This document shows, one piece after another, positions 4,169 through 64,000 of a DNA stretch of 64,000 nt. The number at the start of each line of letters is the position of its first letter. Within the stretch, counting starts at the first letter, position 1. The translations under genes and the position numbers were made by a program. The notes under the pieces were generated by a model. The model did no database searches, was not told where the DNA came from, and was given only the letters and a program-made list of their open reading frames with translations. Location: the sequence record KJ019143.1. One strand, 5' to 3'.

Positions 4169-4242
4169 GGGTTAATAGCTCAGCTGGACAGAGCAACGCT
4201 CTTCTAAAGCGTCGGTCGTTGGTTCGAATCCAACTTAACCCG
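4169..4242 (+). tRNA. tRNA-Arg (anticodon TCT)
   Basis: Acceptor GGGTTAA/TTAACCC, anticodon arm ACGCT-CTTCTAA-AGCGT, T-arm GTTGG-TTCGAAT-CCAAC; no encoded CCA. Confidence 0.95.
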
Positions 4243-4455: not shown

Positions 4456-4527
4456 TCCACAATAGCTCAGCGGTAGAGTCGGCGACTGTTAATCGCCTTG
4501 TCCCTGGTTCGAATCCAGGTTGTGGAG
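4456..4527 (+). tRNA. tRNA-Asn (anticodon GTT)
   Basis: Acceptor TCCACAA/TTGTGGA, anticodon arm GGCGA-CTGTTAA-TCGCC, T-arm CCTGG-TTCGAAT-CCAGG. Confidence 0.95.
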
Positions 4528-22514: not shown

Positions 22515-23681
22515 ATGAAGTTTCTAACAAATACAGGAAATATTGAAGGAATGACCGTGTTTAATCAGAATGAAGTTGATGCTAAGACCCAACCAATGTT
22601 TTTTGGTAAGCCCCTGGGGATACAACGTTATGATACCTTCAAGTATCCTATCTTTGAGAAGCTAACTCAACAACAACTAGGATACTTCTGGAAACCTGAG
22701 GAGATCTCTCTCCAGAAGGATAGATCTGACTATCAGAAGCTACGTCCAGAACAGAAACACATCTTCACTTCTAACCTGAAGTATCAGATTCTTCTAGATT
22801 CTGTACAGGGTCGCGGTCCTGGTATGGCTTTTGCTCCTTATTGCTCTCTCCCAGAACTAGAGGGTTGTCTAAAGGCTTGGGAGTTTATGGAGATGATTCA
22901 TAGTAGATCTTATACTCATATCATCAAGAACCTATACCCAGATCCTTCTGAAGTATTTGATACTATTCTGACAGATGAAAAGATCCTTGAGCGAGCAAAG
23001 ACGGTTACAGCGGCTTATAACGAATTCATTAATGCCGCTCACGAATACGACAACGGCAACACATGGCAACACGCAAATGAAGACGTACCTGCGGCTCTTA
23101 TCAACCGTTATGACCTTAAGCGTAAGCTTTACCGTGCTATGGCTAACGTTAATATCCTAGAGGGTATTCGTTTCTATGTTTCCTTTGCCTGTTCTTTCGC
23201 CTTTGGTGAGTTGAAGCAGATGGAGGCATCAGCCAAGATCATTTCACTCATTGCCCGTGACGAATCACAACACCTAGTTATCAGTCAGAACATTCTGAAG
23301 AACTGGAGGAATGGTGATGATCCTGATATGATCAAGATTGCTGAGGAACAGAAGCCTTGGTTGATTGAAACCTTCAAGTTGGCAGTGGATCAGGAGAAAG
23401 CCTGGGCGGAATACCTCTTTAAAGATGGTTCTATGATTGGTTTGAACGAGAAACTACTAGGAAACTATGTTGAGTGGATTGCTAACCGTCGTATGAAGGC
23501 TGTTGGTCTAGAACCCATCTACGATATCGCAGCTAAGAACAACCCCCTCCCCTGGACAGAACACTGGTTGAACTCCAAGAGTGTTCAGGTTGCCCCTCAG
23601 GAGACTGAGATTACCTCCTATATCGTTGGTAATGTGAACCAGGATGTGAAATCAGATCAGTTTGCTAACTTCTCCCTATAA
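22515..23681 (+). CDS. nrdB: ribonucleotide reductase class Ia beta subunit
   Basis: FWKPEEI, EMIHSRSYTH, LEGIRFYVSF, DESQH, APQETEITSY. Confidence 0.97.
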   Translation: MKFLTNTGNIEGMTVFNQNEVDAKTQPMFFGKPLGIQRYDTFKYPIFEKLTQQQLGYFWKPEEISLQKDRSDYQKLRPEQKHIFTSNLKYQILLDSVQGRGPGMAFAPYCSLPELEGCLKAWEFMEMIHSRSYTHIIKNLYPDPSEVFDTILTDEKILERAKTVTAAYNEFINAAHEYDNGNTWQHANEDVPAALINRYDLKRKLYRAMANVNILEGIRFYVSFACSFAFGELKQMEASAKIISLIARDESQHLVISQNILKNWRNGDDPDMIKIAEEQKPWLIETFKLAVDQEKAWAEYLFKDGSMIGLNEKLLGNYVEWIANRRMKAVGLEPIYDIAAKNNPLPWTEHWLNSKSVQVAPQETEITSYIVGNVNQDVKSDQFANFSL

Positions 23682-43233: not shown

Positions 43234-45549
43234 ATGGCATTTAAGATTAATGGCGTAGTACGCATTGATAATAGTGGCAACGGTTTTCTGGGAATTGTAA
43301 CCGCTACCGACGCTAATATCACAGGAGTTCTCACTGCCACTGAGGTGGATGCGAAAGTATCATCTAAGGCAATAACTGAACAAACAGATGGAACCGTAGA
43401 TGATGTAACTGGTGCAGATGAACTATTACTATTAGATGCCGAGACTGGTGGATTACTAAGAGTATCAATAGATGAGTTCGTGCAGGGTTCAGGCATTGGA
43501 ACTCTAGTAACGGACTTTGATAACTTAACTGTTACTGGTATCACAACCGTTGCCACCCTCAAAGGTATTGGATCTAATAACATCAGTGTAGGGAGCACAC
43601 TTTCCTTTGCTGATGGTACAGAGATCATCATGGGTGACTCTGGTGACTTCAGTATTCATCATGATGGTGACCATACTTACCTAGATGAGACGGGGCAGGG
43701 TAATCTAAAACTCCGTACAAATAACTTTAGAGTAACAAATATAGCAGAAACAAAACCAGCTATTACAGCACAGGTTACTTCTGGTGTTGAGTTGTATTTT
43801 GATGGTAATAAGAAGATAGAAACTACAAATACTGGTGTTCTTGTGAGTGGTATGCTCACTGCTGATAGATTAAGATCAGGTGATATTGCTGCTAGAAATG
43901 TAATCACACTGGGTATTACCACTATCCAAGATCATTTGGAAGTGAATGATAGTACTGGTTCTGGTACGGAATATAATCTTAATGTTAAGACTAATGGTAG
44001 TTCTACCTTTGGTGTCTTAGGTAATGGAAATATTCTACTTGGAAACAGTTCCGGTGCTCCATTCATGGCGACGAATGATCACCACGCAACTTCCAAGAAA
44101 TATGTAGATGACGCCATCGCTGATGATCCTAGCGGTGCTGCGGCTTGGGGTACTGTTGCCTCAAACAACAGTGGTGGTGCTAGTAGTATTACTTTACTGG
44201 GTGGGATGAATGTAGCAAGTGTCACAGCTGGCACATCAAATGCAAAAGGAAATTTCGTGGTTACATTTGCCACTCCAATGCCTGATGCAAACTATTCAGT
44301 AACCGCTAGTTATAATAACGCTAATGTTAACACATATGGGGATATTAGTGTAGGTTCTAAAACAGCAAGTAGTTTTGAGGTTCAAACTTTTGAATCATCA
44401 AATCTGCCTGACTGGCAGGGGTTTGGATTTGTCGTCTTCGCAACCAATGCCCTCCCACCAACAGGCGGCACCGGCACAGATAGCTGGGCAGCTGTAGATC
44501 AAACTATTGTTAATGGTGCTTGTAATGTACCGGCAAGTTTTAACGTTGCTTCAGTAACTAGAACTGGACTGGGCCTATATGACGTGGTGTTTACAACGCC
44601 GATGCCTACTGATAAATACAGCGTTGTGGGTAGCATTACCCGAGACACATTTTCTAATTTCTGTACTTCTAATAGGTCGGCTACTGGCTTTACAGTAAAG
44701 AACACCTATCAGAATCGCGATAACGGTGCTACTCAGTATGCAGACAACCCCTTCTCCTTCACCGTCAACGCCACCAACGCAACGCTACCTGAAACTATTA
44801 CAACGGATCAGTTTACCTCTGCGTTTAATGCTCCTACCTTCAAAAACATTCTCATCAATGGAAATCTGACAATTAATCAACGTAATGTTAATATTACATC
44901 TGTTTCTGCCGGTGAATATGGTGAAGATCGTTGGAAAAAGACATTAGGTGGGATGACGCAGATTGTTGAAGATGGTAATTATCTACCAAGTTCTTCTTAC
45001 ACTTTATCTGGAACAGGTATTACTACAACTACAGCAAACTCACCTGCTTCTGGTGACTGGGACATCTCAACAACCTTTGGTGATATTCCTATTACTGCTC
45101 GTTCTATCCAACTTGAATATGGCAACGTAGCCTCAGCGTTTGACTTGAGACCGGTTGGGGTGGAGCTGAGTTTGTGTCATCGTTATTTTTATAGAATAAT
45201 AAGGTCCGTCAACAGCACTCCTTTTACTATTAAATCTAACAGTAACTCAAACGACATTCCCGCTGTAGGCTCGATCGAGTGTTCTTACAGTGTAGTTTTT
45301 CCAGCCACAATGAGAACCCAACCTACTGGCTCAAATTACAGTAACAACGGAGCAAATAACTATTTGGCAATTCCAGGATATAGGGCTATTACTAACTCTT
45401 TTCTGGCAAGCGATGTAAGTTTTTCATACGCATCCTCTGAAGACGCAGTAATTTTAGTGGATACGACCTTAGGGAGCATCGGAGTAGTTCAAGGAGCTGC
45501 GTTCCCGCTAGAGGCGGCTTTTAGTTATGACATCGACGCCGAACTTTAA
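43234..45549 (+). CDS. tail fibre-like structural protein
   Basis: 771 aa G/T/S/N-rich; HATSKKYVD; duplicated NVASVT...F.TPMP...YSV module; NILINGNLTINQR; late promoter. Confidence 0.85.
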   Translation: MAFKINGVVRIDNSGNGFLGIVTATDANITGVLTATEVDAKVSSKAITEQTDGTVDDVTGADELLLLDAETGGLLRVSIDEFVQGSGIGTLVTDFDNLTVTGITTVATLKGIGSNNISVGSTLSFADGTEIIMGDSGDFSIHHDGDHTYLDETGQGNLKLRTNNFRVTNIAETKPAITAQVTSGVELYFDGNKKIETTNTGVLVSGMLTADRLRSGDIAARNVITLGITTIQDHLEVNDSTGSGTEYNLNVKTNGSSTFGVLGNGNILLGNSSGAPFMATNDHHATSKKYVDDAIADDPSGAAAWGTVASNNSGGASSITLLGGMNVASVTAGTSNAKGNFVVTFATPMPDANYSVTASYNNANVNTYGDISVGSKTASSFEVQTFESSNLPDWQGFGFVVFATNALPPTGGTGTDSWAAVDQTIVNGACNVPASFNVASVTRTGLGLYDVVFTTPMPTDKYSVVGSITRDTFSNFCTSNRSATGFTVKNTYQNRDNGATQYADNPFSFTVNATNATLPETITTDQFTSAFNAPTFKNILINGNLTINQRNVNITSVSAGEYGEDRWKKTLGGMTQIVEDGNYLPSSSYTLSGTGITTTTANSPASGDWDISTTFGDIPITARSIQLEYGNVASAFDLRPVGVELSLCHRYFYRIIRSVNSTPFTIKSNSNSNDIPAVGSIECSYSVVFPATMRTQPTGSNYSNNGANNYLAIPGYRAITNSFLASDVSFSYASSEDAVILVDTTLGSIGVVQGAAFPLEAAFSYDIDAEL

Positions 45550-46051: not shown

Positions 46052-47131
46052 ATGGCTTCAACACTTACACGCCGTCAAGGCGCATCTATCTGGGATCAGT
46101 TTTGTTCCTGGGTCACATCAACCAACAATCGTCTTTACGTCGGTTGGTTCGGTGTTCTAATGATTCCTACATTGTTAGCCGCAACTGTATGTTTCATTAT
46201 CGCTTTCGTGGGTGCTCCCCCAGTGGACATCGACGGAATCCGTGAACCAGTAGCTGGTTCACTCATGTATGGAAACAACATCATCTCTGGTGCAGTTGTT
46301 CCTAGTTCAAACGCAATCGGTTTACACTTCTACCCCATCTGGGAAGCTGCATCACTTGATGAATGGCTTTACAATGGTGGTCCTTTCCAACTAGTTGTCT
46401 TCCACTTCCTTATCGGTATCTACGCCTATATGGGACGTGAATGGGAACTCTCTTATCGTTTAGGTATGAGACCTTGGATCTGTGTAGCATACTCTGCACC
46501 AGTTGCAGCAGCTTCAGCAGTATTCCTAGTCTATCCTTTCGGTCAAGGTTCATTCTCAGACGCGATGCCCTTGGGTATCTCTGGAACATTCAACTACATG
46601 TTGGTCTTCCAAGCAGAACATAACATCTTGATGCACCCCTTCCACATGTTGGGAGTCGCAGGTGTCTTCGGTGGTTCATTGTTCTCAGCGATGCATGGTT
46701 CACTTGTTACCTCTTCACTTGTCCGTGAGACAACTGAAACTGAGTCACAGAACTATGGTTACAAGTTCGGTCAAGAAGAAGAGACCTATAACATCGTGGC
46801 AGCCCATGGCTACTTCGGTCGTTTGATCTTCCAATACGCTTCATTCAACAACTCACGCTCACTCCACTTCTTCTTAGCCGCATGGCCAGTTGTGGGTATC
46901 TGGTTCACCGCACTTGGTGTTTCCACAATGGCATTCAACCTCAATGGTTTCAACTTCAACCAGTCTGTTATCGACGGACAAGGTAGAGTATTGAACACCT
47001 GGGCGGATGTTCTTAACAGAGCTGGTCTTGGGATGGAAGTAATGCATGAGAGAAATGCACACAACTTCCCACTAGATTTGGCAGCAGCTGAGTCCACACC
47101 AGTGGCTCTAATTGCACCATCTGTTGGTTGA
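46052..47131 (+). CDS. psbA: photosystem II D1 protein
   Basis: [18 protein letters not shown] (Glu130 form), [13 protein letters not shown]; uninterrupted. Confidence 0.99.
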
Positions 47132-47443: not shown

Positions 47444-48499
47444 ATGACGACAAGTACACTTACAACACCACAAAGGGGGTGGTTTGATCTACTGGACGAT
47501 TGGATCAAGAGAGATAGATTTATCTTTATTGGTTGGTCTGGACTTCTCCTTCTCCCCTGTGCATATCTCTCTATTGGTGGATGGCTCACTGGAACGACAT
47601 TCGTAACTTCATGGTATACGCATGGACTCGCCTCCTCTTATTTGGAAGGTGCAAACTTCTTGACGGCGGCTGTCTCGACTCCTGCTGATGCTATGGGTCA
47701 TTCTCTCCTTCTACTTTGGGGTCCTGAATCTCAGGGCGACTTCCAGCGGTGGCTCCAACTTGGAGGGCTTTGGTCATTTGTTGCTCTCCATGGTGCCTTC
47801 GCTCTAATTGGATTCATGCTTCGTCAGTTTGAACTGGCAAGACTCATTGGTATCCGTCCCTACAACGCTATTGCATTCAGTGGTCCTATCGCTGTATTTG
47901 TCAGTGTGTTTCTTCTATACCCACTAGGTCAATCTTCCTGGTTCTTTGCCCCCTCCTTTGGTGTGGCAGCAATCTTTAGATTCCTATTGTTTCTTCAGGG
48001 TTTCCACAACTGGACACTGAACCCCTTCCATATGATGGGAGTTGCTGGTATACTAGGTGGAGCACTACTATCTGCAATCCATGGCGTTACTGTTGAAAAT
48101 ACCCTATATGAAGATGGAGAACAGAACAACACCTTCACTGCGTTCGATTCCACGCAGGAGGAAGAGACCTATTCGATGGTTACTGCGAACCGCTTCTGGT
48201 CGCAAATCTTCGGGGTTGCGTTTAGTAATAAGCGTTGGCTTCACTTCTTTATGTTGTTTGTTCCTGTCATGGGTCTTTGGGTCTCAAGTATTGGGATCAT
48301 TGGGCTTGCTCTTAATCTTCGTGCTTATGATTTTGTGAGCCAAGAGATTAGAGCAGCAGAAGATCCTGAGTTTGAAACTTTCTACACAAAGAACATCCTT
48401 CTTAACGAAGGACTAAGAGCATGGATGGCACCTGTGGATCAACCACATGAGTCATTTGTATTCCCAGAAGAAGTTCTACCTAGAGGTAACGCATTGTGA
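47444..48499 (+). CDS. psbD: photosystem II D2 protein
   Basis: [31 protein letters not shown]; uninterrupted. Confidence 0.99.
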
Positions 48500-56007: not shown

Positions 56008-56382
56008 ATGAATACATATGGTTCTCCTGAAGGCTATCTCTTTAACCTTCATACCTGCTCAGCATCAGAAGCGAAGCGAATGTGGAAAGAATCTATAAAG
56101 AATGATTGGAAACATAAATGTGCTTATTGTGGATCGGAACATGAAATTACTTTAGATCATATAGTACCCAAAGCGAAAGGGGGTACTAGTCATACAACCA
56201 ATGTCGTAGCTTGTTGTCGTTCTTGTAACGGGAGTAAGGCATATGAGGATTGGATTATCTGGTATATTCAACAGCCGTTCTTCACTGAAGAGAGGAGGGA
56301 GGCTATTGAAAAGTGGATGGAGAAGGGCCTCCTCAACAATAACTTAGTTGCATATCCACCCAGAAGAAATGTCGTTTATTGA
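56008..56382 (+). CDS. HNH endonuclease
   Basis: CAYCG...TLDHIVPKAKGG...NVVACCRSCNGSK. Confidence 0.92.
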   Translation: MNTYGSPEGYLFNLHTCSASEAKRMWKESIKNDWKHKCAYCGSEHEITLDHIVPKAKGGTSHTTNVVACCRSCNGSKAYEDWIIWYIQQPFFTEERREAIEKWMEKGLLNNNLVAYPPRRNVVY

Positions 56383-56544: not shown

Positions 56545-56598
56545 AACCTAAGAAGAGTATATGCGTTCTTCGTCGGATAGCCTGAATCGACAAAAGAG

Positions 56599-59500
56599 AT
56601 GATCTCAACAGCGACTAAGATTAAATTTAAAAGGTCTGGTGTAGCCGGACGTAGACCCTCCTTAGCTGATCTTCAGTTAGGTGAATTGGGGATCAATTAT
56701 AACGATGGTAAACTATTTTTCCGACAGGAAAATGAAGTAGTTGGCTCTCGTATCATTGAACCTGGACAGGGTGATGTAATCGGTAAGACTATTTTCGTAT
56801 CCACAAAGGGTAACGATAACAATAGTGGTCTTAACGAAAGAGATGCCAAGAGAACTGTTAAAGCGGCCGCCGCAGTAGCAGAACCTGGTGACTCCATCAA
56901 ACTGTATCCAGGTCAGTACATCGAAGATAACCCTATCGTATTTAAGGATAGGGTATCTGTAGAGGGTATGGAGCTTCGTAACGTTCTCGTTACTCCAGCC
57001 AACCCCAGTAAAGACTTGTATCAAGTTGGTGAGGCGTTCCACGCTACCAACCATTCCTTTGTGTCCAATAGGGATTCAACAGATGGTGCCTCTATTATCA
57101 CCTATCGTCCTCTAGAGGGAACTGCGTCTGACAGGTATTTTGACGCGGCTAGACTCATCAGGGACAATCTTAGCTTCATTGCTAACGAGACAGTAGGTTT
57201 CCTAACCAGTGGATATTCAGGCTTTGCCGCTGGTCAGAGATCACAGGACGCTGCTCGTGCTCTAGAACTAAACAAGAACTTCATAGTAGAAGAAGCATTT
57301 CAATATATCAACTCTCCTGATTATACAGGAGCCACATACTTCAACCCAGACCCAGCACAGTGTAAGAGAGACCTAGGAAATATCATTGATGGTTGGAGAT
57401 ATGATCTCATCTCTGATGGTAACACCAGATCTACTGGTCTTGGTCTAACCTACTACGCACCTATTCCCTTTGTGAATAGTGCTAATGTTGCTGACCTTGT
57501 ATACAACAGAAATAACGGTGATGTTCTAATTGAAACCGACGTAGATACACAGGTTTCAGTTGGTGAGAAGATCAAACTACAGGATATCAGACTAGAGTGT
57601 GGTTCCTACAATAACGACTTCTTTATCACTGGTTTCAAGTATGATAACACCAGTGGTATTGGAACAGTTAATCTACCCTTTATCCATAACGTCAAGGTTG
57701 GAGACCTTGTTAAGTTTGATGGTTTAGAGTTTGATTGTCCTGCCTATGGTGCCATTGAATATGGTATCCAAGACTTCAAGTATAATGAAACTACTGGTGG
57801 AAGTGTTGTCACACTCACCGAAGATCATGATCTAAAGATTGGTGACACCATTGAACTAAGAGACCTTCAGTTCGATTGTCCCGCCTATGGTGGTGACTTC
57901 ACTAACATCATCAACCTAGAATACAATAAGACCAGTGGTCAGGGTGTTATCACATATGACAAACCCGCCGATCTCAAGTCTGGTGACGTTGTTATCCTCT
58001 ATGACCTCACACTAACTTGTGATGCTTATGGTAACGCTATCTCAGTTACTGATTTCTCTTATGATAACTTCACTGGTATCACTGAAGTAGAAGTAAATAG
58101 ACCCCACAACCTCCGTCCCGGAGACCTAATCAAACTAGAGAACCTTAAGTTCTCTTGTGATTCCTACCTTAATGAAACATACAAGGTCTCTAACTTTGTA
58201 TATAATGAGAGCACTGGTGATAGTGTCCTCACCCTAACTGAACCACATAGTTTAGTTGCTGGTAAGAACGTCAGACTTGCTGACCTAGTTTTCTCCTGTA
58301 ACTCCTATGTTCCAACCGCTAAAGCAATCTCTGATTTCCAGTATGATGAAGTAGTTGGTATCTCTACTATTACTCTAGCATCTCCACACAACTTATCAGT
58401 TGGTGAGCAGTTCAGACTAGAGGATTTAGTATTCTCCTGTAACTCATATTCCTTCACTGATATTCCTATCATTGATGCACCATATGATAATGTAACTGGT
58501 TATGTAACCCTATCGTTCTCTGGTGACCACGGACAACAGGTTGGTGAGAGAGTAAGACTCAGAGATATTGAGTACTCCTGCCCTGGTGGTTCAGGTATCA
58601 CTACAACCTTGTTCCCCGATGGAACCTTTGGTTATGAGTTTGAAATCCTAAGTGTTCCAAACACTAAGAAGATGATTCTTAATGTTGGCACCTCCACTAT
58701 TGAACACTCCTATGTGAGTGGTGGTACTGCTACCGTTGGTATTACAACTACTATCTTCCCTGATGGAACACAAGGTTTCGACTTCAATGTATCCAGTGTT
58801 AATAGTTCCACTGTTATCGAAGCAAGTGTTGGTATTTCTACCATCGCTCACAACTATGTTTCTGGTGGATCATTATTCGTTGGTTTCACTACCACAGTAT
58901 TCCCCGATGGAACACAAGGTGATACCTTCAGAGTTAATTCTATTCCTTCTAGCACTCAAATCAGTGTTAATGTTGGTGTATCTTCTATCGCCCATACTTT
59001 CGTATCCGGTGGTACAGCAACTGACCTAGACTCTTTCATCCCTGTATCTGGTTTCACCTACAATGAAGGTGACGGAACTGGACTAGTATCCCTAGACAAG
59101 GCACACAACCTAGTGGTTGGTGACTCTTTTGTTCTAGAGGATCTTAAGTTCAACTGTAACTCCTACAGAACAGGTGGTACTTCTACTATTGATATCACTA
59201 ACTTTGAGTATGATAAGGTAACCGGACTATCTACAGTCACACTATCTTCTTCACACAACCTACATGTTAATGATACCGTAGCACTATATGATATCAAGTT
59301 CTCTTGTCCTGGTGGTTCAGGTATTACAACTAATATCTTCCCCGATGGAACCAGAGACAACTTCTATGATGTAGTTGCTGACCTAAACCCCAACCAGATT
59401 ATTGTTCGGGTTGGTAAGTCTGACATTACTCACACATACGCTAGTGGTGGTAGTCTATCCGTTGGTATCACTACTAACATCTTCCCTGATGGAACTAGAC

Positions 59501-62500
59501 CTTCTGGTGACTTCTTCCAGGTTATCTCTGTTCCTTCTACCAAGTCTGTTCTAACTCAGGTTGGTCTATCCTCTATCGCTCACTCATACGCAAGTGGTGG
59601 TAAGTTCTACACTGGTATCACTACTAATGTATTCCCACAGGTATTCACCGACCCCAACATCAAGGTAACCAACGCTGTATATGACGAAGTATCTGGTGTT
59701 ATCACCATTACTACTAACAAGGCACACGGACTTACCGCTACCGCACCTGTTCTACTACAGGATCTAAACTTCTCTTGTCTCTCTGGTGGTGTAGGAAACA
59801 CCCCAGGCAACCTTGTGTTCCCCAGGAACCAGGAAGTTTATGATGTTGTGTCCGTTCTATCTACTACACAATATACGATCAATGTAGGTCCTTCTGACTT
59901 CTCTCACACTTATGTTGATGGTGGTACTTCTACCACACAGAACATCACTAAGGCATCCTACAACAAAGGAACTGGTGATCTAACAGTAACCCTAGACAAG
60001 CAACACGGTTATTCAGTTGGTGATCGTGCTAGTGTGGTTGATCTCCTCTTCTCCTGTCAGTCTGGTGGTCCTAACAACCAACCTGGAACACTTCTATTCC
60101 CTCGTCCTACTGATGAGTATGAAGTTCTATCTGCAAGTGGTAAGACACTCACAGTTAATGTTGGAGCGTTCCCATCACTAGTTCATACCTATAAGAATGG
60201 TGGATCACTAACCTATAGTTCTACTGTACTTCCTGTAAGTAACGCAGTTTATGATCAATCAACTGGAGTTCTAACACTCACCACATCAATTGCACTAGGG
60301 GCACCTGTTGGTTCTACCATTAAGATGCAGGGTCTAAACTTCTCCTGTGCCTCTGGTGGTCCTGGTAATGACGCTGGTGCTATTGTATTTCCAAGACTAG
60401 ACACTCCTACCTTCAAGGTGAAGGAAGTCAAGAGTGGTGTATCCTATGTTATCAATGTAGGAACCTCTACACTCTCACACACATATACATCTGGTGGTTT
60501 CTCCTCACTCAAGAAGTTGAAGAACGACCCCAATATTTTCAAAGTTATCGACACCCCAACACCTAGTAAGGTTATTACTAATGTCGGTGTATCCTCTATC
60601 GCTCATGACTATGTGAGTGGTGGTAATATGTTCGTGGGTATCACCACTAATGTATTCCCTGATGGAACTCGCCCTGATGGAAGTAGGTTCGAAGTTATCT
60701 CCGCCCTATCACCCAACCAGGCACTCATCAACATCGGTGTTTCTACTATCACCCACAACTACGATAGTGGTGGTAGGATGCAGTATGGTACTACCAATGA
60801 GAGACCTGTTCTAGACTTCCTATACGATGGTCAGACTGGTATCTCCACTGTAACTATTAGAGGAACTCATGGTTTGAACCAGGGTGACCTAGTGAAACTC
60901 AGAGGTCTTGAGTTCGCTTGTACTAACTCACCTGGTATTACAACTACTATCTTCCCAGATGGAACTGCCGCTGGTCTCAATATCTACAAGGTTACTGAGA
61001 TTATTAGTAACAGTACCTTCAAGACAAATGTAGGTAGAGTTGGATTCGATCATACTTACATCCAAGGTGGTTCCGCTTTCGTTGGTATCACTACTAACAT
61101 CTTCCCAGATGGAACACAAGGTTACAACTATACAGTTGCCGCCATTCCTAATAAGAATCAGGTAACAGTTGATGTGGGTATCTCCAGTATCCAACATGAT
61201 TATATTCGTGGTGGATCACTATTCTCTGGTAAGACTAACGAGAGAGATATCGCAGACTTCAAGTATGATCACATCTCTGGTGATGCGGTTCTTACCTTCA
61301 GAAAGGCACAGAACTTATTCACACAAGATCTAGTAAAACTTAAGAACCTTCAGTTTGATTGTCCAAACTCTACTGGTATCACTACTACTCTCTTCCCAGA
61401 CGGAACCAGAAGTAACCTCTTCCTAATCAAGGAGAGACTAAACCCAACACAGTTCAAACTCAATGTTGGCACTTCACCATTCGGTCATGACTATGTGAGA
61501 GGAACAGGTCAGGCATTCGTTGGTATCACTACTAACATCTTCCCTGATACCAAGACACAACCAAGTAAGTTATTCAAGGTTGTTGATGTCCCAACTCCTA
61601 CTACTATCTCCGCCAAGATTGGTGTATCCACTATCTCCCACTCATATGTTAAGGGTGGTAAGGTATTCGTTGGTATTAACACTGATATCTTCCCTGGAGA
61701 TGAGCAAGTATCACCACTAGGTGACACATATACAGTTCAGAGTATCACTAAAGATGGTGAGTTGGTTATCAATGTTGGACTATCTTCTATCAGTCACTCC
61801 TATGGTGGCGGTGGTAAGGTTCTATATGGACAGAGTTCTGGTAACAACCTACAACATATCACTGGTCCTGGTGTACTAGACGCAACCATCGCCGCTATCG
61901 ATTTCGAGAAACAGGTAGCAATCAACGCACTAAACAACAGACCTTGGGGTTCATTCGTTCCTGAAGAGACTGCTGTTGTGGAGGCGTTCGCCTATGATAA
62001 CCAGACTGGTTTCGGAACAGTAACCGCTAGGGGAATCAACGTCAACACTGGTGACACCATCAGGATGAGTGACATTCAGTTTGTTTGTTCTGAGGAGTAC
62101 GCAGGTGTAACCACTACCTTCTTCCCTGATAATACTAGACCAGAGGGTCAGTACTTTAGAGTAGAAAGAAGAATCAACATCGATGAGTTTGAAGTTAATA
62201 TTGGTGTTTCTACTATCAAACACGTATTCAACTACGAAACAGGTGGTAACGTATATCGTTACAGACAGTCTATTCTAGATGTTAACTACGATAGATCCAG
62301 TGGTATCACTAGTATCCGAGCAACCAAGCATGGTTACAAGGCGAAAGATATCGTGGAACTAGGTGATATCGAGTTCGATTGTCCCGTATTCAAACCTCAA
62401 TATGATATTGAGAACTTTGTTTATGATAACACAACTGGTCTATCCACAGTTACTACTACTGTAGATAACACTATCAAGGTAGGTGACAATGTAAAACTAG

Positions 62501-64000
62501 CAGACATCAAACTAGAGTGTCCTCCATATGGTAACCAGAGAGTTATTGATAACTTTGTTTATGATAACAAGAGTGGTCTTTCCACCATATCACTAACAGC
62601 AGCACACGGACTCAACCTAAGACCTAGACCTTCTGTTTCTATCTCTACCGCCCTCTATGATAACCAGACTGGTATCCTAACCGTTACCACCAATGCTGAC
62701 ATCAACTTCACCGATAGAAGTGGTCAGGGTGTTCAACTCAGTGGTCTAAGGTTCTCCTGTGACTCCGCTGGTTTCCCTGGAACTCTCACCTATCCTGAAG
62801 AGAATCTAGTTTATGATATCCTAGAGATTCAGTCTCCTAGTAAGTTTAAGATTAATGTTGGTCTCTCCACTATCGCTCACGAGTATGTGAATGGTGGTGC
62901 CGCTACTAAGGTTGATAGATTCGATGTGAAACTACAGGGTATCAAGTTTGATTGTCCCGCCTATGGAAACACAATCGATGTTACTAACTTCCTATACGAT
63001 CAGAGAAGTGGTAACTCACTAGTTACCGTAGATAAGGCACACAAACTATCTGTTGGTGATAACATCAAACTAGCGGATCTCAAGTTCCAATGTGCTCCAT
63101 ATGGTAACGATTACAATGTTCTAAACGCAGATTACGACAACACAACTGGTATTATTACAGTAACCACTAACCAAAACATCAACGGTGTTGGTGTTGGTGA
63201 TACTATTCGCCTCTCCAGACTACAGTTTGATTGTGTAGGTAGTGGTCCTGAGTATAATATCACTAACGTATTCTTCAATACTGGTAACAGATCAGTTATT
63301 CTCACAGTTCCTGAAAGACCAATTGGTCTAAACCCAGGTGATGACATTAAACTAACCAATATGTCATACCTAGAAGGTGGTAGTGGTAATGTAGTTGCGT
63401 ATCCAGACGGAAGAGATTCGAGTCTAAACATCTTCCGTATCAATGATGTTCAACCTAACTCCATTCTCCCTGGATACTTCGATGTAACCACAGCGTTCCC
63501 CAATGTTAAGGATCCTTTCGCGATCTTCAACAATACTGGTAGACTAACCACTGGTATTACTACTAACATTTACCCTGAGAATGTAGGTGCTGAAGGTGGT
63601 TTCTATGAAGTTATCCGCCTAAGACAAGATAACCAGTTTGAGATTCAGGTAGGAACCTCTACTATCACTCACAACTATGTGAGACAAGGACAGATGTTCA
63701 CTGGTGTAACCACCAACTTCTTCCCTGGTAACCTACAGAACTCACCTAGAGGAAACATCTTTGAGATTGTGGAAGTTCCCACAGCAACACAGGTGAGAAT
63801 CAATGTAGGTGTATCTTCTATCTCTCATAGTTATGATAGTGGTGGTCAGATGTTTGTTGGTATCACTACTAACATCTTCCCTGATGGAACCAGAGGTAAC
63901 CTATTCCCAGTTGTTGGTGTAGCAAATACACTCACCCTAAGAATCGACGCTGGTGTATCCAGTATTCCTCACAACTATGTTTCTGGTGGAGAACTATTCG
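56599..64000 (+). CDS. giant repetitive virion structural (fibre-like) protein, 3' end beyond window
   Basis: Translated by hand in one frame from ATG 56599 to the window end with no stop (2467 codons); N-terminus KIKFKRS...GELGINYNDGKLF, beta-helix-like FVSTKGNDNNSG...LYPGQYIE, helical DAARLI/CKRDL units, then YDNxTG...FxC and TTxFPDG...HxYVxGG repeats. Confidence 0.93.
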   Translation, partial: MISTATKIKFKRSGVAGRRPSLADLQLGELGINYNDGKLFFRQENEVVGSRIIEPGQGDVIGKTIFVSTKGNDNNSGLNERDAKRTVKAAAAVAEPGDSIKLYPGQYIEDNPIVFKDRVSVEGMELRNVLVTPANPSKDLYQVGEAFHATNHSFVSNRDSTDGASIITYRPLEGTASDRYFDAARLIRDNLSFIANETVGFLTSGYSGFAAGQRSQDAARALELNKNFIVEEAFQYINSPDYTGATYFNPDPAQCKRDLGNIIDGWRYDLISDGNTRSTGLGLTYYAPIPFVNSANVADLVYNRNNGDVLIETDVDTQVSVGEKIKLQDIRLECGSYNNDFFITGFKYDNTSGIGTVNLPFIHNVKVGDLVKFDGLEFDCPAYGAIEYGIQDFKYNETTGGSVVTLTEDHDLKIGDTIELRDLQFDCPAYGGDFTNIINLEYNKTSGQGVITYDKPADLKSGDVVILYDLTLTCDAYGNAISVTDFSYDNFTGITEVEVNRPHNLRPGDLIKLENLKFSCDSYLNETYKVSNFVYNESTGDSVLTLTEPHSLVAGKNVRLADLVFSCNSYVPTAKAISDFQYDEVVGISTITLASPHNLSVGEQFRLEDLVFSCNSYSFTDIPIIDAPYDNVTGYVTLSFSGDHGQQVGERVRLRDIEYSCPGGSGITTTLFPDGTFGYEFEILSVPNTKKMILNVGTSTIEHSYVSGGTATVGITTTIFPDGTQGFDFNVSSVNSSTVIEASVGISTIAHNYVSGGSLFVGFTTTVFPDGTQGDTFRVNSIPSSTQISVNVGVSSIAHTFVSGGTATDLDSFIPVSGFTYNEGDGTGLVSLDKAHNLVVGDSFVLEDLKFNCNSYRTGGTSTIDITNFEYDKVTGLSTVTLSSSHNLHVNDTVALYDIKFSCPGGSGITTNIFPDGTRDNFYDVVADLNPNQIIVRVGKSDITHTYASGGSLSVGITTNIFPDGTRPSGDFFQVISVPSTKSVLTQVGLSSIAHSYASGGKFYTGITTNVFPQVFTDPNIKVTNAVYDEVSGVITITTNKAHGLTATAPVLLQDLNFSCLSGGVGNTPGNLVFPRNQEVYDVVSVLSTTQYTINVGPSDFSHTYVDGGTSTTQNITKASYNKGTGDLTVTLDKQHGYSVGDRASVVDLLFSCQSGGPNNQPGTLLFPRPTDEYEVLSASGKTLTVNVGAFPSLVHTYKNGGSLTYSSTVLPVSNAVYDQSTGVLTLTTSIALGAPVGSTIKMQGLNFSCASGGPGNDAGAIVFPRLDTPTFKVKEVKSGVSYVINVGTSTLSHTYTSGGFSSLKKLKNDPNIFKVIDTPTPSKVITNVGVSSIAHDYVSGGNMFVGITTNVFPDGTRPDGSRFEVISALSPNQALINIGVSTITHNYDSGGRMQYGTTNERPVLDFLYDGQTGISTVTIRGTHGLNQGDLVKLRGLEFACTNSPGITTTIFPDGTAAGLNIYKVTEIISNSTFKTNVGRVGFDHTYIQGGSAFVGITTNIFPDGTQGYNYTVAAIPNKNQVTVDVGISSIQHDYIRGGSLFSGKTNERDIADFKYDHISGDAVLTFRKAQNLFTQDLVKLKNLQFDCPNSTGITTTLFPDGTRSNLFLIKERLNPTQFKLNVGTSPFGHDYVRGTGQAFVGITTNIFPDTKTQPSKLFKVVDVPTPTTISAKIGVSTISHSYVKGGKVFVGINTDIFPGDEQVSPLGDTYTVQSITKDGELVINVGLSSISHSYGGGGKVLYGQSSGNNLQHITGPGVLDATIAAIDFEKQVAINALNNRPWGSFVPEETAVVEAFAYDNQTGFGTVTARGINVNTGDTIRMSDIQFVCSEEYAGVTTTFFPDNTRPEGQYFRVERRINIDEFEVNIGVSTIKHVFNYETGGNVYRYRQSILDVNYDRSSGITSIRATKHGYKAKDIVELGDIEFDCPVFKPQYDIENFVYDNTTGLSTVTTTVDNTIKVGDNVKLADIKLECPPYGNQRVIDNFVYDNKSGLSTISLTAAHGLNLRPRPSVSISTALYDNQTGILTVTTNADINFTDRSGQGVQLSGLRFSCDSAGFPGTLTYPEENLVYDILEIQSPSKFKINVGLSTIAHEYVNGGAATKVDRFDVKLQGIKFDCPAYGNTIDVTNFLYDQRSGNSLVTVDKAHKLSVGDNIKLADLKFQCAPYGNDYNVLNADYDNTTGIITVTTNQNINGVGVGDTIRLSRLQFDCVGSGPEYNITNVFFNTGNRSVILTVPERPIGLNPGDDIKLTNMSYLEGGSGNVVAYPDGRDSSLNIFRINDVQPNSILPGYFDVTTAFPNVKDPFAIFNNTGRLTTGITTNIYPENVGAEGGFYEVIRLRQDNQFEIQVGTSTITHNYVRQGQMFTGVTTNFFPGNLQNSPRGNIFEIVEVPTATQVRINVGVSSISHSYDSGGQMFVGITTNIFPDGTRGNLFPVVGVANTLTLRIDAGVSSIPHNYVSGGELF
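59461..63890 (+). repeat. dispersed 30-35 bp near-identical DNA repeats inside the giant ORF
   Basis: gttggtatcactactaacatcttccctgatggaac identical at 59461 and 63856; 30-bp match at 61519; one mismatch at 61081. Confidence 0.9.

What the first reader, a model, noticed from the sequence alone, without database searches (positions are those of the whole stretch)
57481..64000. Giant virion protein with a balanced nested (bracket-like) domain architecture
The repeats are not simple tandem units. Two half-motifs occur: an opener N (YDNxTG...Hx(L)xxGDxVxLxDLxFxC) and a closer C (TTxFPDG...VNVGxSxIxHxYVxGG). From 57481 the order is N x8, C x3, N x2, C x2, then NC NC NC inserted inside a half-started closer, C, C, N, C, C, N, C, C, C. 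That is 15 N and 15 C, the running depth never goes negative, and it returns to zero at ~61815. The chain then resumes what looks like the second half of the helical unit it left at ~57450 (CKRDL...TYY before, TIAAIDFEKQVAINALNN after). After one standalone NC, a second nest opens at ~62270, reaches depth 6 and stands at depth 2 at the window end. One opener (62560-62955) is itself split by a complete inserted domain. Inference: each beta-domain is made of discontinuous halves, so the chain runs out and back as a branched Matryoshka stalk built by repeated domain-in-domain insertion. The ORF is absent from the supplied track.
Basis: partly seen in the sequence, partly recalled or inferred. Interest (0 to 1): 0.88.

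Follow-up and report, generated by a model that had tools for sequence, protein, structure and literature searches.

The report
Phage fibre protein of nested barrels
A 3,967-residue tail-fibre-class protein of a marine cyanophage is built from about 33 small beta-barrel domains inserted one inside another up to eight levels deep, so its half-domain motifs read like perfectly balanced brackets, an unusually deep case of domain-in-domain insertion.

Summary
The window comes from Synechococcus phage ACG-2014f (a T4-like cyanomyovirus). An ORF starts at 56599 and runs off the window. The full gene encodes 3,967 aa and is annotated only as hypothetical.

- 15 N and 15 C, with depth back to zero at 61815.
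- A second nest that reaches depth 6 and stands at depth 2 at the window end.

Exactly two more closers follow beyond the window and return the depth to zero. The whole protein is a balanced bracket word.

Homologues with many different architectures are balanced too. In relatives, bracket partners that lie about 790 aa apart here are contiguous, and a whole NC unit sits exactly at an N|C junction elsewhere.

AlphaFold models an N-N-C-C fragment confidently as all-beta. Removing the outer C abolishes the last strand of the outer N only. The unit resembles the ubiquitin-E1 FCCH, P22 I-domain and endosialidase beta-barrels.

No atomic contacts could be read, and covariation tests were weak. Virion location and the fibre role rest on homology and gene position.

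This is a new variant of a known kind (domain insertion), and I found no description of it in the searched literature.

The parts
56599..63999 (+). First 2,467 codons of the 3,967-codon gene Syn7803C12_262 (AIX41624.1, 'hypothetical protein'). The rest lies beyond the window.
56599..57108 (+). N-terminal frame module. It holds a fibre-type N-terminal motif (aa 5-48) and the start of a beta-helix-like domain (aa 63-164, with a weak DUF1565 match at aa 70-126).
   Evidence: PHROGs 17885, 5342, 9851, 35830, 1699; conserved in 112 of 120 homologues
57343..57465 (+). Left half of a helical unit that is interrupted by nest 1 (aa 249-289).
   Evidence: matches positions 15-55 of the contiguous unit at aa 3189-3325 (E 0.003, weak)
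57496..61815 (+). Nest 1: 15 N and 15 C halves, making 15 barrels. The bracket word is (((((((()))(())[()()()]))())())) and the maximum depth is 8.
57496..58581 (+). Eight consecutive openers, N1-N8, with 11-12 aa linkers.
58603..59013 (+). Closers of N8, N7 and N6, with 7-aa linkers.
59053..59601 (+). Side branch '(())' (N9 N10 C10 C9). This is the fragment modelled with AlphaFold (model span 59035-59613).
59605..59649 (+). 5' stub of the closer of N5 ('GITTNVFPQ'). It is cut in its FPDG loop.
59677..60498 (+). Three tandem complete NC barrels inserted inside the split closer of N5.
60520..60624 (+). 3' part of the closer of N5. It is contiguous with N5 in homologues P0028, P0030 and P0033.
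60646..61815 (+). Return path of nest 1: C4, then a side barrel NC, C3, a second side barrel NC, then C2 and C1.
61837..61953 (+). Right half of the interrupted helical unit (aa 1747-1785).
   Evidence: hhalign probability 95.9%, E 5.5e-9 to positions 55-91 of the contiguous unit
61987..62247 (+). Standalone contiguous NC barrel.
62281..63999 (+). Nest 2. It opens here, reaches depth 6, and stands at depth 2 at the window end. Two further closers just beyond the window close it.
62554..62955 (+). Opener split in its HGL-GD loop (5' part 62554-62619, 3' part 62923-62955) by a complete NC barrel (62653-62898). S-CAM7-like homologues carry '(())' at this place.
63280..63543 (+). Degenerate innermost unit of nest 2. 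If barrels stack (inferred), it would be the distal tip. It has a weak N and a weak C and lacks the invariant Cys and the HxY motif.
   Evidence: E 0.008 and 0.026; appears as a gap of about 110 aa in the homologue strings

Best explanation
The gene encodes a tail-fibre-class structural protein of a T4-like cyanophage.

Architecture:
- A conserved frame sits at the two chain ends. It consists of an N-terminal fibre motif plus a beta-helix-like domain whose N-part is at aa 63-164 and whose C-part is at aa 3538-3703, followed by a conserved C-terminal domain.
- Alpha-helical units lie between the ends.
- Trees of barrels are inserted into these helical units. Each barrel is a beta-barrel of about 85-90 aa with an E1-FCCH-like fold.

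Each barrel is encoded as an N half (three strands, ending in an invariant Cys) and a C half (three or four strands, with the motifs FPDG...NVG.S.I.H.Y..GG).

New barrels are inserted mainly at the N|C junction. They are inserted more rarely in the HGL-GD loop of N or the FPDG loop of C.

As a result, the chain climbs a stalk through successive N halves (11-12 aa linkers), reaches an innermost tip unit, and returns through the C halves (7-aa linkers). Every joint between barrels is therefore crossed twice, which should give stiff, branched projections. Their length changes in evolution by balanced insertion or loss of whole barrels.

What is shown: the bracket grammar, the insertion events between homologues, and the all-beta barrel fold.

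What is inferred:
- The halves of a nested pair touch in three dimensions.
- The barrels stack end to end.
- Folding must proceed from the inside out.
- The protein sits on the baseplate and serves host adsorption, with the divergent innermost units as the exposed tips.
For: Grammar:
- 23 of 52 distinct homologue architectures are exactly balanced and most of the rest are off by one. The summed imbalance is 49 against a mean of 264 in shuffles.

Insertion events between homologues:
- A whole NC unit sits exactly at an N|C junction in some homologues.
- N5 and the partner assigned to it by bracket matching are contiguous in P0028, P0030 and P0033 but about 790 aa apart here.
- Other architecture differences among homologues ('' vs '()', '()' vs '(())', three vs four '') are all balanced.

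Structure:
- AlphaFold model of '()' from a 99-sequence alignment: pLDDT 87.2, all-beta, three strands per N and four per C.
- Deleting only the outer C removes the DSSP strand at residues 31-41 of the outer N. All inner-barrel strands of three or more residues stay unchanged.
- Foldseek aligns 96-100 columns at 3.2-3.9 A rmsd to the E1 FCCH region, and also hits the P22 I-domain and the endosialidase beta-barrel.
- BFVD hits are cyanophage fibre, baseplate and structural proteins.

Co-ancestry of halves: N-N similarity correlates with similarity of the matched C halves (Mantel r 0.38, 0 of 5000 permutations reached it; nested pairs only r 0.39, p 0.006).

Linkers: very constant lengths.

Frame and context:
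- The N- and C-modules co-occur in 112 and 102 of 120 homologues.
- The two modules lie only 46 profile positions apart in PHROG 9851.
- The genes downstream are baseplate wedge genes.
- Homologous N-termini in other cyanophages are annotated as tail fibre.
Against: - No coordinates or contact maps were available, so pairing in three dimensions is indirect.
- In the truncation test the orphan N kept a high pLDDT (92-96).
- A coupling score trained on contiguous units ranks the true nested partner at only 0.38, where chance is 0.5.
- A block mutual-information test was uninformative.
- One isolate allele (Syn7803US26, L002) is an in-frame fusion of aa 1-779 to aa 3366-3967 and leaves five openers unclosed. 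It may be a defective mutant or an assembly collapse.
- In more distant family members many N hits have no detectable C. This is probably an HMM sensitivity limit, but that was not shown.
- There are no proteomic or imaging data for this protein.
- Foldseek E-values to solved structures are weak (7e-4 to 2e-2).
Confidence: 0.8

Rival explanations
1. N and C are two independent small beta modules strung along an ordinary beads-on-a-string or trimeric fibre. Their balanced order would then be a by-product of block duplications rather than of shared domains.
For: The orphan N kept a high pLDDT when its partner C was removed. The covariation tests were weak or null.
Against: - Balance holds in many unrelated architectures and within each spacer-bounded block.
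- Indels between homologues are always whole NC units, placed at the N|C junction.
- The third strand of the outer N loses its sheet partner only when the outer C is deleted.
- A contiguous NC superposes on single six-stranded barrels.
Confidence: 0.05
2. The halves do complement each other, but in trans. In an oligomeric fibre the N halves of one chain would pair with C halves of a neighbouring chain (domain swapping), so the bracket order would reflect antiparallel packing of chains rather than a hairpin path within one chain.
For: Phage fibres are usually trimers (general knowledge). The pTM of the monomer model is only 0.56. Nothing here tests the oligomeric state.
Against: - The 7-aa N-to-C and C-to-C linkers, together with contiguous NC units that model as closed barrels, favour pairing in cis.
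- Split units with balanced inserts fit cis insertion.
Confidence: 0.07
3. The nested architecture is real, but the protein is not a receptor-binding fibre. It could be, for example, a baseplate or whisker decoration, or a non-virion protein.
For: There is no proteomic evidence. The GenBank annotation is 'hypothetical protein'. FCCH-like barrels are known as passive outer decorations of tail tubes (PMC13576161).
Against: - PHROG matches are to tail fibre families at both ends.
- Homologues are annotated as tail fibre or long tail fibre.
- The gene abuts baseplate wedge genes.
Confidence: 0.15

Closest known systems
FCCH (first catalytic cysteine half) domain of ubiquitin-activating enzyme E1, and FCCH-like decoration domains of siphovirus tail tube proteins
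   Same: Both are small six-stranded antiparallel beta-barrels of about 90 aa. Foldseek aligns 96-100 columns at 3.2-3.9 A rmsd (2v31 TMt 0.55). FCCH is itself an inserted domain in E1, and in phage tails it is exposed on the outside (PMC13576161).
   Different: There is no detectable sequence homology (no Pfam or PDB sequence hit). In known cases there is one copy per protein. Here about 33 copies are inserted into one another.
P22 coat protein I-domain and the beta-barrel domain of phage endosialidases (K1F, phi92)
   Same: Both are beta-barrels that occur as insertions inside another domain of a phage structural protein, and both are Foldseek hits.
   Different: They are single-level insertions into a different host fold, and they are not recursive.
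Cyanomyovirus tail fibre proteins (PHROG 17885, 5342, 9851)
   Same: They share the N-terminal and C-terminal frame modules and NC units. The genes lie in the same structural region.
   Different: PHROG 17885 profiles are about 1,000 aa with few units. In PHROG 9851 the two frame parts are nearly contiguous. This protein carries about 3,370 aa of inserted helical units and barrel trees.
Tandem Ig-like, FN3 or Big repeat fibres and adhesins (beads on a string)
   Same: Both are long extracellular rods made of many small beta domains, with length variation by gain and loss of repeats.
   Different: There, each repeat is contiguous and is joined to its neighbour by one linker. Here each domain is split, neighbours are joined by two linkers, and the topology is a tree with the chain ends together.
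Nested ('Russian doll') domain insertions in multidomain proteins (recalled from surveys of domain insertion; not checked here)
   Same: The principle is the same: one domain is inserted in a loop of another, occasionally two or three levels deep.
   Different: Here the depth is 8 (at least 10 openers in a row in homologue P0121), the same fold is inserted into itself, and there are three defined insertion loops.

Membership tests
Phage tail-fibre-class structural proteins (PHROG 17885/5342/9851) | Sequence match to the family profiles at the conserved ends | tested here: met
   phrog_17885: E 2.5e-111 for the N-terminus and 9.4e-123 for the C-terminus. phrog_5342 and phrog_9851 also match.
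Phage tail-fibre-class structural proteins (PHROG 17885/5342/9851) | Gene located in the tail/baseplate module | tested here: met
   It is followed by a 1,868-aa baseplate wedge subunit (phrog_1469) and the gp7-like wedge initiator.
Phage tail-fibre-class structural proteins (PHROG 17885/5342/9851) | Protein present in purified virions, at the baseplate periphery | not testable with these tools
   No proteomic or imaging data were found for ACG-2014f or S-CAM7.
E1 FCCH-like / endosialidase-type small beta-barrel fold | A closed antiparallel beta-barrel of about 90 residues that superposes on known members | tested here: inconclusive
   AlphaFold pLDDT 87. Foldseek probability 1.00, with 96-100 columns at 3.2-3.9 A rmsd, but E only 7e-3 to 2e-2 and TM 0.43-0.55. 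No coordinates were inspected.
E1 FCCH-like / endosialidase-type small beta-barrel fold | Detectable sequence homology to the family | tested here: not met
   No Pfam family at E<=1 and no PDB sequence hit.
Discontinuous domains created by domain insertion | The two halves are contiguous in some homologues and separated by a complete extra domain in others | tested here: met
Discontinuous domains created by domain insertion | Properly nested (balanced) order of halves along the chain | tested here: met
Discontinuous domains created by domain insertion | The halves form one compact domain in three dimensions | tested here: inconclusive
   Support is indirect only. Strand 31-41 of the outer N is a DSSP strand when the outer C is present and is not when it is removed. 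No contacts were available, and covariation was weak.
Pectate-lyase-like right-handed beta-helix (Pfam DUF1565) | Score above the Pfam gathering threshold | tested here: not met
   17.3 bits against a cut-off of 20.3, covering only profile positions 2-61 of 257. The C-terminal part has no Pfam or PDB hit.
Tandem-repeat (beads-on-a-string) fibre | Each repeat unit is contiguous and units follow head to tail | tested here: not met
   Runs of up to 8 N halves are followed by runs of C halves. TRF-type tandem logic does not describe this order.

The most novel reading that the evidence does not exclude
This family would be the first described case of deep recursive self-insertion of a protein domain. 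One barrel fold is inserted into copies of itself 8 to 10 levels deep. The architecture follows a context-free (bracket) grammar, and the molecule is a branched tree whose chain ends meet. Each outer barrel could close only after everything inside it has been made and folded, so folding would have to run from the inside out. Stalk length and branching would evolve by balanced insertion or loss of whole barrels, presenting divergent tip units for host recognition.
Probability: 0.55. Interest if true: 0.85.

Novelty: new variant of a known kind. Interest (0 to 1): 0.78.

Why it matters
Domain insertion is common, but as far as I recall it is almost always one level deep. A natural protein that applies the same insertion rule recursively, with about 33 barrels and depth 8, would be a new architectural principle for building long, stiff, branched extracellular structures from a single chain.

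It would offer several things:
- A natural test bed for how discontinuous domains fold, both during translation and under force.
- A possible explanation for how cyanophage fibre genes change length and branching without losing their fold.
- A warning for annotation: standard repeat and domain finders see nothing here (no Pfam hit), although the unit is well defined.

The family is small (633 clusters at 50% identity in 1.84 billion). Every named relative found in the phage searches is a cyanophage or an uncultured marine virus, so host-range determinants of abundant marine phages may be hidden in it.

Tried and rejected
- **Sequence searches of the repeat region.** Pfam and PDB sequence searches returned nothing, as did searches of the C-terminal domain.
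- **Coordinates.** The prediction tool returns none and leaves no file, so pairing could not be read directly.
- **Coupling score.** A score trained on contiguous NC units and applied to nested pairs gave a mean rank of 0.38 against 0.5 by chance. That is too weak to decide anything.
- **MI maps.** The maps from adjacent and nested pairs correlate at only 0.18.
- **Block MI test.** Bracket versus crossed pairings on 87 NNCC quadruples showed no difference.
- **pLDDT drop as a readout of the truncation test.** There was no drop. Only the DSSP strand assignment changed.
- **The search for related loci in viral contigs.** It returned only one locus, a deletion allele.
- **Scan of 141 more distant family members.** Many have N hits without a detectable C half, and many are fragments, so this set could not serve as a clean independent test.
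- **Literature.** Searches for nested or matryoshka insertion in phage fibres, and for cyanomyovirus baseplate cryo-EM, found no description of this architecture.
- **First-in-first-out pairing (N1 with the first C).** Rejected. The 7-aa N-to-C and C-to-C linkers cannot span a stalk, and N5 is contiguous with its last-in-first-out partner in homologues.
- **Repeat mis-assembly as the cause.** Rejected. At least 43 isolates and 60%-identical phages such as S-CAM7 share the architecture.
Full report
**Where the window comes from.** The 7.4 kb region is 100% identical to Synechococcus phage ACG-2014f isolate Syn7803C12 (KJ019143.1; Kyanoviridae, a T4-like cyanomyovirus). It is at least 95% identical to 44 further isolate records. 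The open frame begins after a stop at 56578, and the first ATG is at 56599. The frame continues past the window end, which is why the mechanical ORF list omits it. GenBank annotates the gene as Syn7803C12_262, 'hypothetical protein', 3,967 aa. The window holds residues 1-2467. Downstream lie a 116-aa ORF, a 1,868-aa baseplate wedge subunit and the gp7-like wedge initiator. Upstream lie psbA, psbD, talC and small ORFs.

**Checking the observation.** I seeded two profile HMMs from regular-expression matches and iterated them on the full protein. The opener N has 35 positions (F.YD..TG..TVT....H.L..GD.V.L..L.F.C). The closer C has 41 positions (TT.FPDG....F.V..V......NVG.S.I.H.Y..GG).

- eight N
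- three C
- two N
- two C
- a nine-residue stub of a C
- three complete NC units
- the remainder of that C
- then C, N, C, C, N, C, C, C

That makes 15 N and 15 C. The running depth is never negative and returns to zero at residue 1739 (nt 61815). A standalone NC follows. A second nest opens at nt 62281, and one of its openers (62554-62955) is split by a complete NC. Counting a weak N, the depth reaches 6, and it is 2 at the window end.

I fetched the rest of the gene. Exactly two more closers follow (aa 2472 and 2527) and bring the depth to zero. The remainder reads '(())', a 64-aa spacer, '()', a 137-aa spacer, '()', and then a 430-aa C-terminal domain. The whole protein is therefore a balanced bracket word that returns to zero at every non-repeat spacer. 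For 30 N and 30 C in random order, the chance of that is about 1.4e-5 (my calculation from Catalan numbers). Only this ORF in the window contains N or C units.

**Homologues.** A protein search returned 260 relatives, of which 120 were fetched. Their bracket strings are very varied. They include ((()())), (()), ((())), (()) and ((..360 aa..)), and they are balanced or off by one. The failures sit at truncated proteins, at one degenerate unit, or at a lone terminal N. Over 52 distinct architectures the summed imbalance is 49. In 2,000 shuffles the mean is 264 and the minimum is 191.

A profile of the contiguous NC unit finds only 633 clusters among 1.84 billion representatives. The family is small. 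In that more distant set many N hits lack a detectable C half and many sequences are fragments, so I do not count it as an independent test.

**Direct evidence for insertion.** Two ortholog comparisons show bracket partners behaving as one unit.
- The NC at aa 2919-3000 is contiguous here and in P0018 and P0028 ('...LIFECES|SGVTNTRVYPDNK...'). In P0002, P0003 and P0006 a complete 88-aa NC unit sits exactly at that junction, while the flanking N and C stay aligned.
- In P0028, P0030 and P0033, opener N5 (aa 486-520) is followed at once by its closer. In this protein the second half of that closer aligns to aa 1308-1342. This is the position that bracket matching assigns to N5. It lies about 790 residues downstream, with eight complete barrels in between.

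Every other architecture difference among homologues is also a balanced insert. Examples are '' against '()' inside the split opener, '()' against '(())', and three against four ''.

Three insertion sites emerge:
- the N|C junction after the invariant Cys (the main site)
- the HGL-GD loop of N
- the FPDG loop of C

Linker lengths are very constant: 11-12 aa from N to N, and 7 aa from N to C and from C to C. This rules out first-in-first-out pairing on geometric grounds.

**Structure.** AlphaFold2 was run on the in-window '()' fragment (aa 813-1005) with a 99-sequence alignment of equivalent N-N-C-C segments. It gave mean pLDDT 87.2 and pTM 0.56. The model is all-beta, with three strands per N half and four per C half. 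The tool returns no coordinates.

I therefore ran a truncation test with the same alignment, cut after the inner C to give '('. The pLDDT stayed high. However, the third strand of the now orphan outer N (residues 31-41) is no longer a DSSP strand, and its first strand shortens. All inner-barrel strands of three or more residues are unchanged. The simplest reading is that this strand was hydrogen-bonded to the outer C, its bracket partner. This is indirect evidence.

Foldseek gave the following hits:
- The truncated model aligns 96-100 columns at 3.2-3.9 A rmsd to the FCCH region of ubiquitin E1 enzymes (isolated FCCH 2v31, TMt 0.55).
- It also hits the P22 coat I-domain and the endosialidase beta-barrel.
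- All of these are barrels that themselves occur as insertions.
- E-values are modest (7e-3 and above; 7e-4 for the two-barrel model).
- Against predicted viral structures the hits are cyanophage proteins named tail fibre, long tail fibre, baseplate wedge initiator, structural protein and fibre. There are also phage proteins annotated as containing an E1 FCCH domain or an endosialidase beta-barrel domain.

FCCH-like barrels are already known as outward-facing decorations of siphovirus tail tubes (PMC13576161).

**Co-ancestry and covariation.** Within the protein, similarity among N halves correlates with similarity among their bracket-matched C halves. The Mantel r is 0.38, reached by 0 of 5,000 permutations. 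For the 12 nested pairs alone, r is 0.39 and p is 0.006. This fits duplication of N and C as one unit. Finer covariation tests did not help:
- A coupling score trained on contiguous units ranks the true nested partner at only 0.38, against 0.5 by chance.
- A block mutual-information comparison of bracket against crossed pairings was flat.

**The frame around the nests.** Profile-profile comparison places the right flank (aa 1747-1785) on positions 55-91 of a contiguous helical unit at aa 3189-3325 (probability 96%, E 5.5e-9). The left flank (aa 249-289) falls on positions 15-55. It is collinear and abutting, although weak on its own (E 0.003). Nest 1, about 1,440 aa, is therefore itself an insert in a helical unit.

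One level further out, the N-terminal module and the C-terminal module occur in 112 and 102 of 120 homologues respectively, at opposite ends of the variable middle in every case inspected. In the profile of PHROG 9851 ('tail fiber protein'), the stretches matching aa 63-164 and aa 3538-3703 of this protein lie only 46 positions apart. This suggests that the entire middle of about 3,370 aa is an insertion in a terminal frame domain. The frame's start weakly resembles the DUF1565 beta-helix, below threshold. I regard this outermost bracket as likely but not shown.

**Function.** Several observations place the protein in the tail-fibre and baseplate class:
- The first 48 residues match the N-termini of long-tail-fibre families.
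- Both ends match tail fibre PHROGs.
- Homologous N-termini in S-SCSM1, S-SKS1, S-CAM9, P-SSM2 and others are annotated as tail fibre.
- The gene abuts baseplate wedge genes.

No proteomic or imaging data were found. The innermost unit of nest 2 is degenerate, and in other family members the innermost position holds a domain of about 360 aa that is not an NC unit. This fits stalks that present a distal tip, but it is inference.

**Evidence against, and limits.**
- Three-dimensional pairing was not seen directly.
- The orphan half kept a high pLDDT in the truncation test.
- Covariation is weak.
- One isolate allele (Syn7803US26, L002) is an in-frame fusion of aa 1-779 to aa 3366-3967 through 16 identical residues in two C units. 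It leaves five openers unclosed. That genome is the shortest of the set, so this may be a defective mutant or a repeat collapse in assembly.

**Comparison with what is known, and novelty.** Domain insertion, FCCH-like barrels on phage tails, and giant cyanophage fibre genes are all known. What I did not find in five literature searches, or in Pfam, is one fold inserted into itself recursively to depth 8, giving a bracket grammar and a tree-shaped single chain. Homologue P0121 shows at least 10 openers in a row. I rate this a new variant of a known kind.

Noticed in passing
L002:10001-14098 (isolate Syn7803US26; corresponds to window 56599 onward): This isolate's allele is 1,365 aa. It fuses aa 1-779 in frame to aa 3366-3967 through a 16-aa identical stretch shared by two C units. 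Its bracket word is unbalanced, with five openers unclosed. The genome is the shortest of the isolates (196,842 bp). It is either a deletion mutant or a repeat collapse in assembly.
   Followed up: partly
window 56785-57090 and L001 about 22612-23109 (aa 63-164 and aa 3538-3703): The two ends of the giant protein match stretches only 46 positions apart in the PHROG 9851 tail fibre profile. The N- and C-modules occur in 112 and 102 of 120 homologues. The whole middle of about 3,370 aa may be one giant insertion in a terminal beta-helix-like frame domain.
   Followed up: partly
window 63280-63543: The innermost unit of nest 2 is degenerate: it lacks the invariant Cys and the HxY motif. In other family members the innermost position holds a domain of about 360 aa that is not an NC unit. 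The tips of the stalks may be the specialised parts.
   Followed up: no
every N and C unit, e.g. window 57496-61815: Each barrel has one invariant Cys (the last residue of N, at the insertion point) and one invariant His in the C half. That gives more than 30 lone cysteines in a presumably extracellular protein. Their role (metal site, cross-link or packing) is unknown.
   Followed up: no
L001:23909-24259 (just beyond the window): The 116-aa ORF after the giant gene belongs to PHROG 1276, a family whose profile also matched NC units of the giant protein. Some relatives may fuse this small domain to barrels.
   Followed up: no
window 56008-56382: A 124-aa ORF annotated as a putative endonuclease lies directly upstream of the giant gene. 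It may be a homing-type endonuclease next to a highly recombinogenic repeat gene.
   Followed up: no
window 4169-4242 and 4456-4527: Two tRNA genes are present: Arg-TCT and Asn-GTT.
   Followed up: no
window 43234-45549, 46052-47131, 47444-48499: A separate 771-aa 'tail fiber' gene, psbA and psbD lie upstream. Photosynthesis genes therefore sit between fibre genes. GC skew turns negative over 44-48 kb and again over the giant gene (58-64 kb), although all the large ORFs are on the + strand.
   Followed up: no
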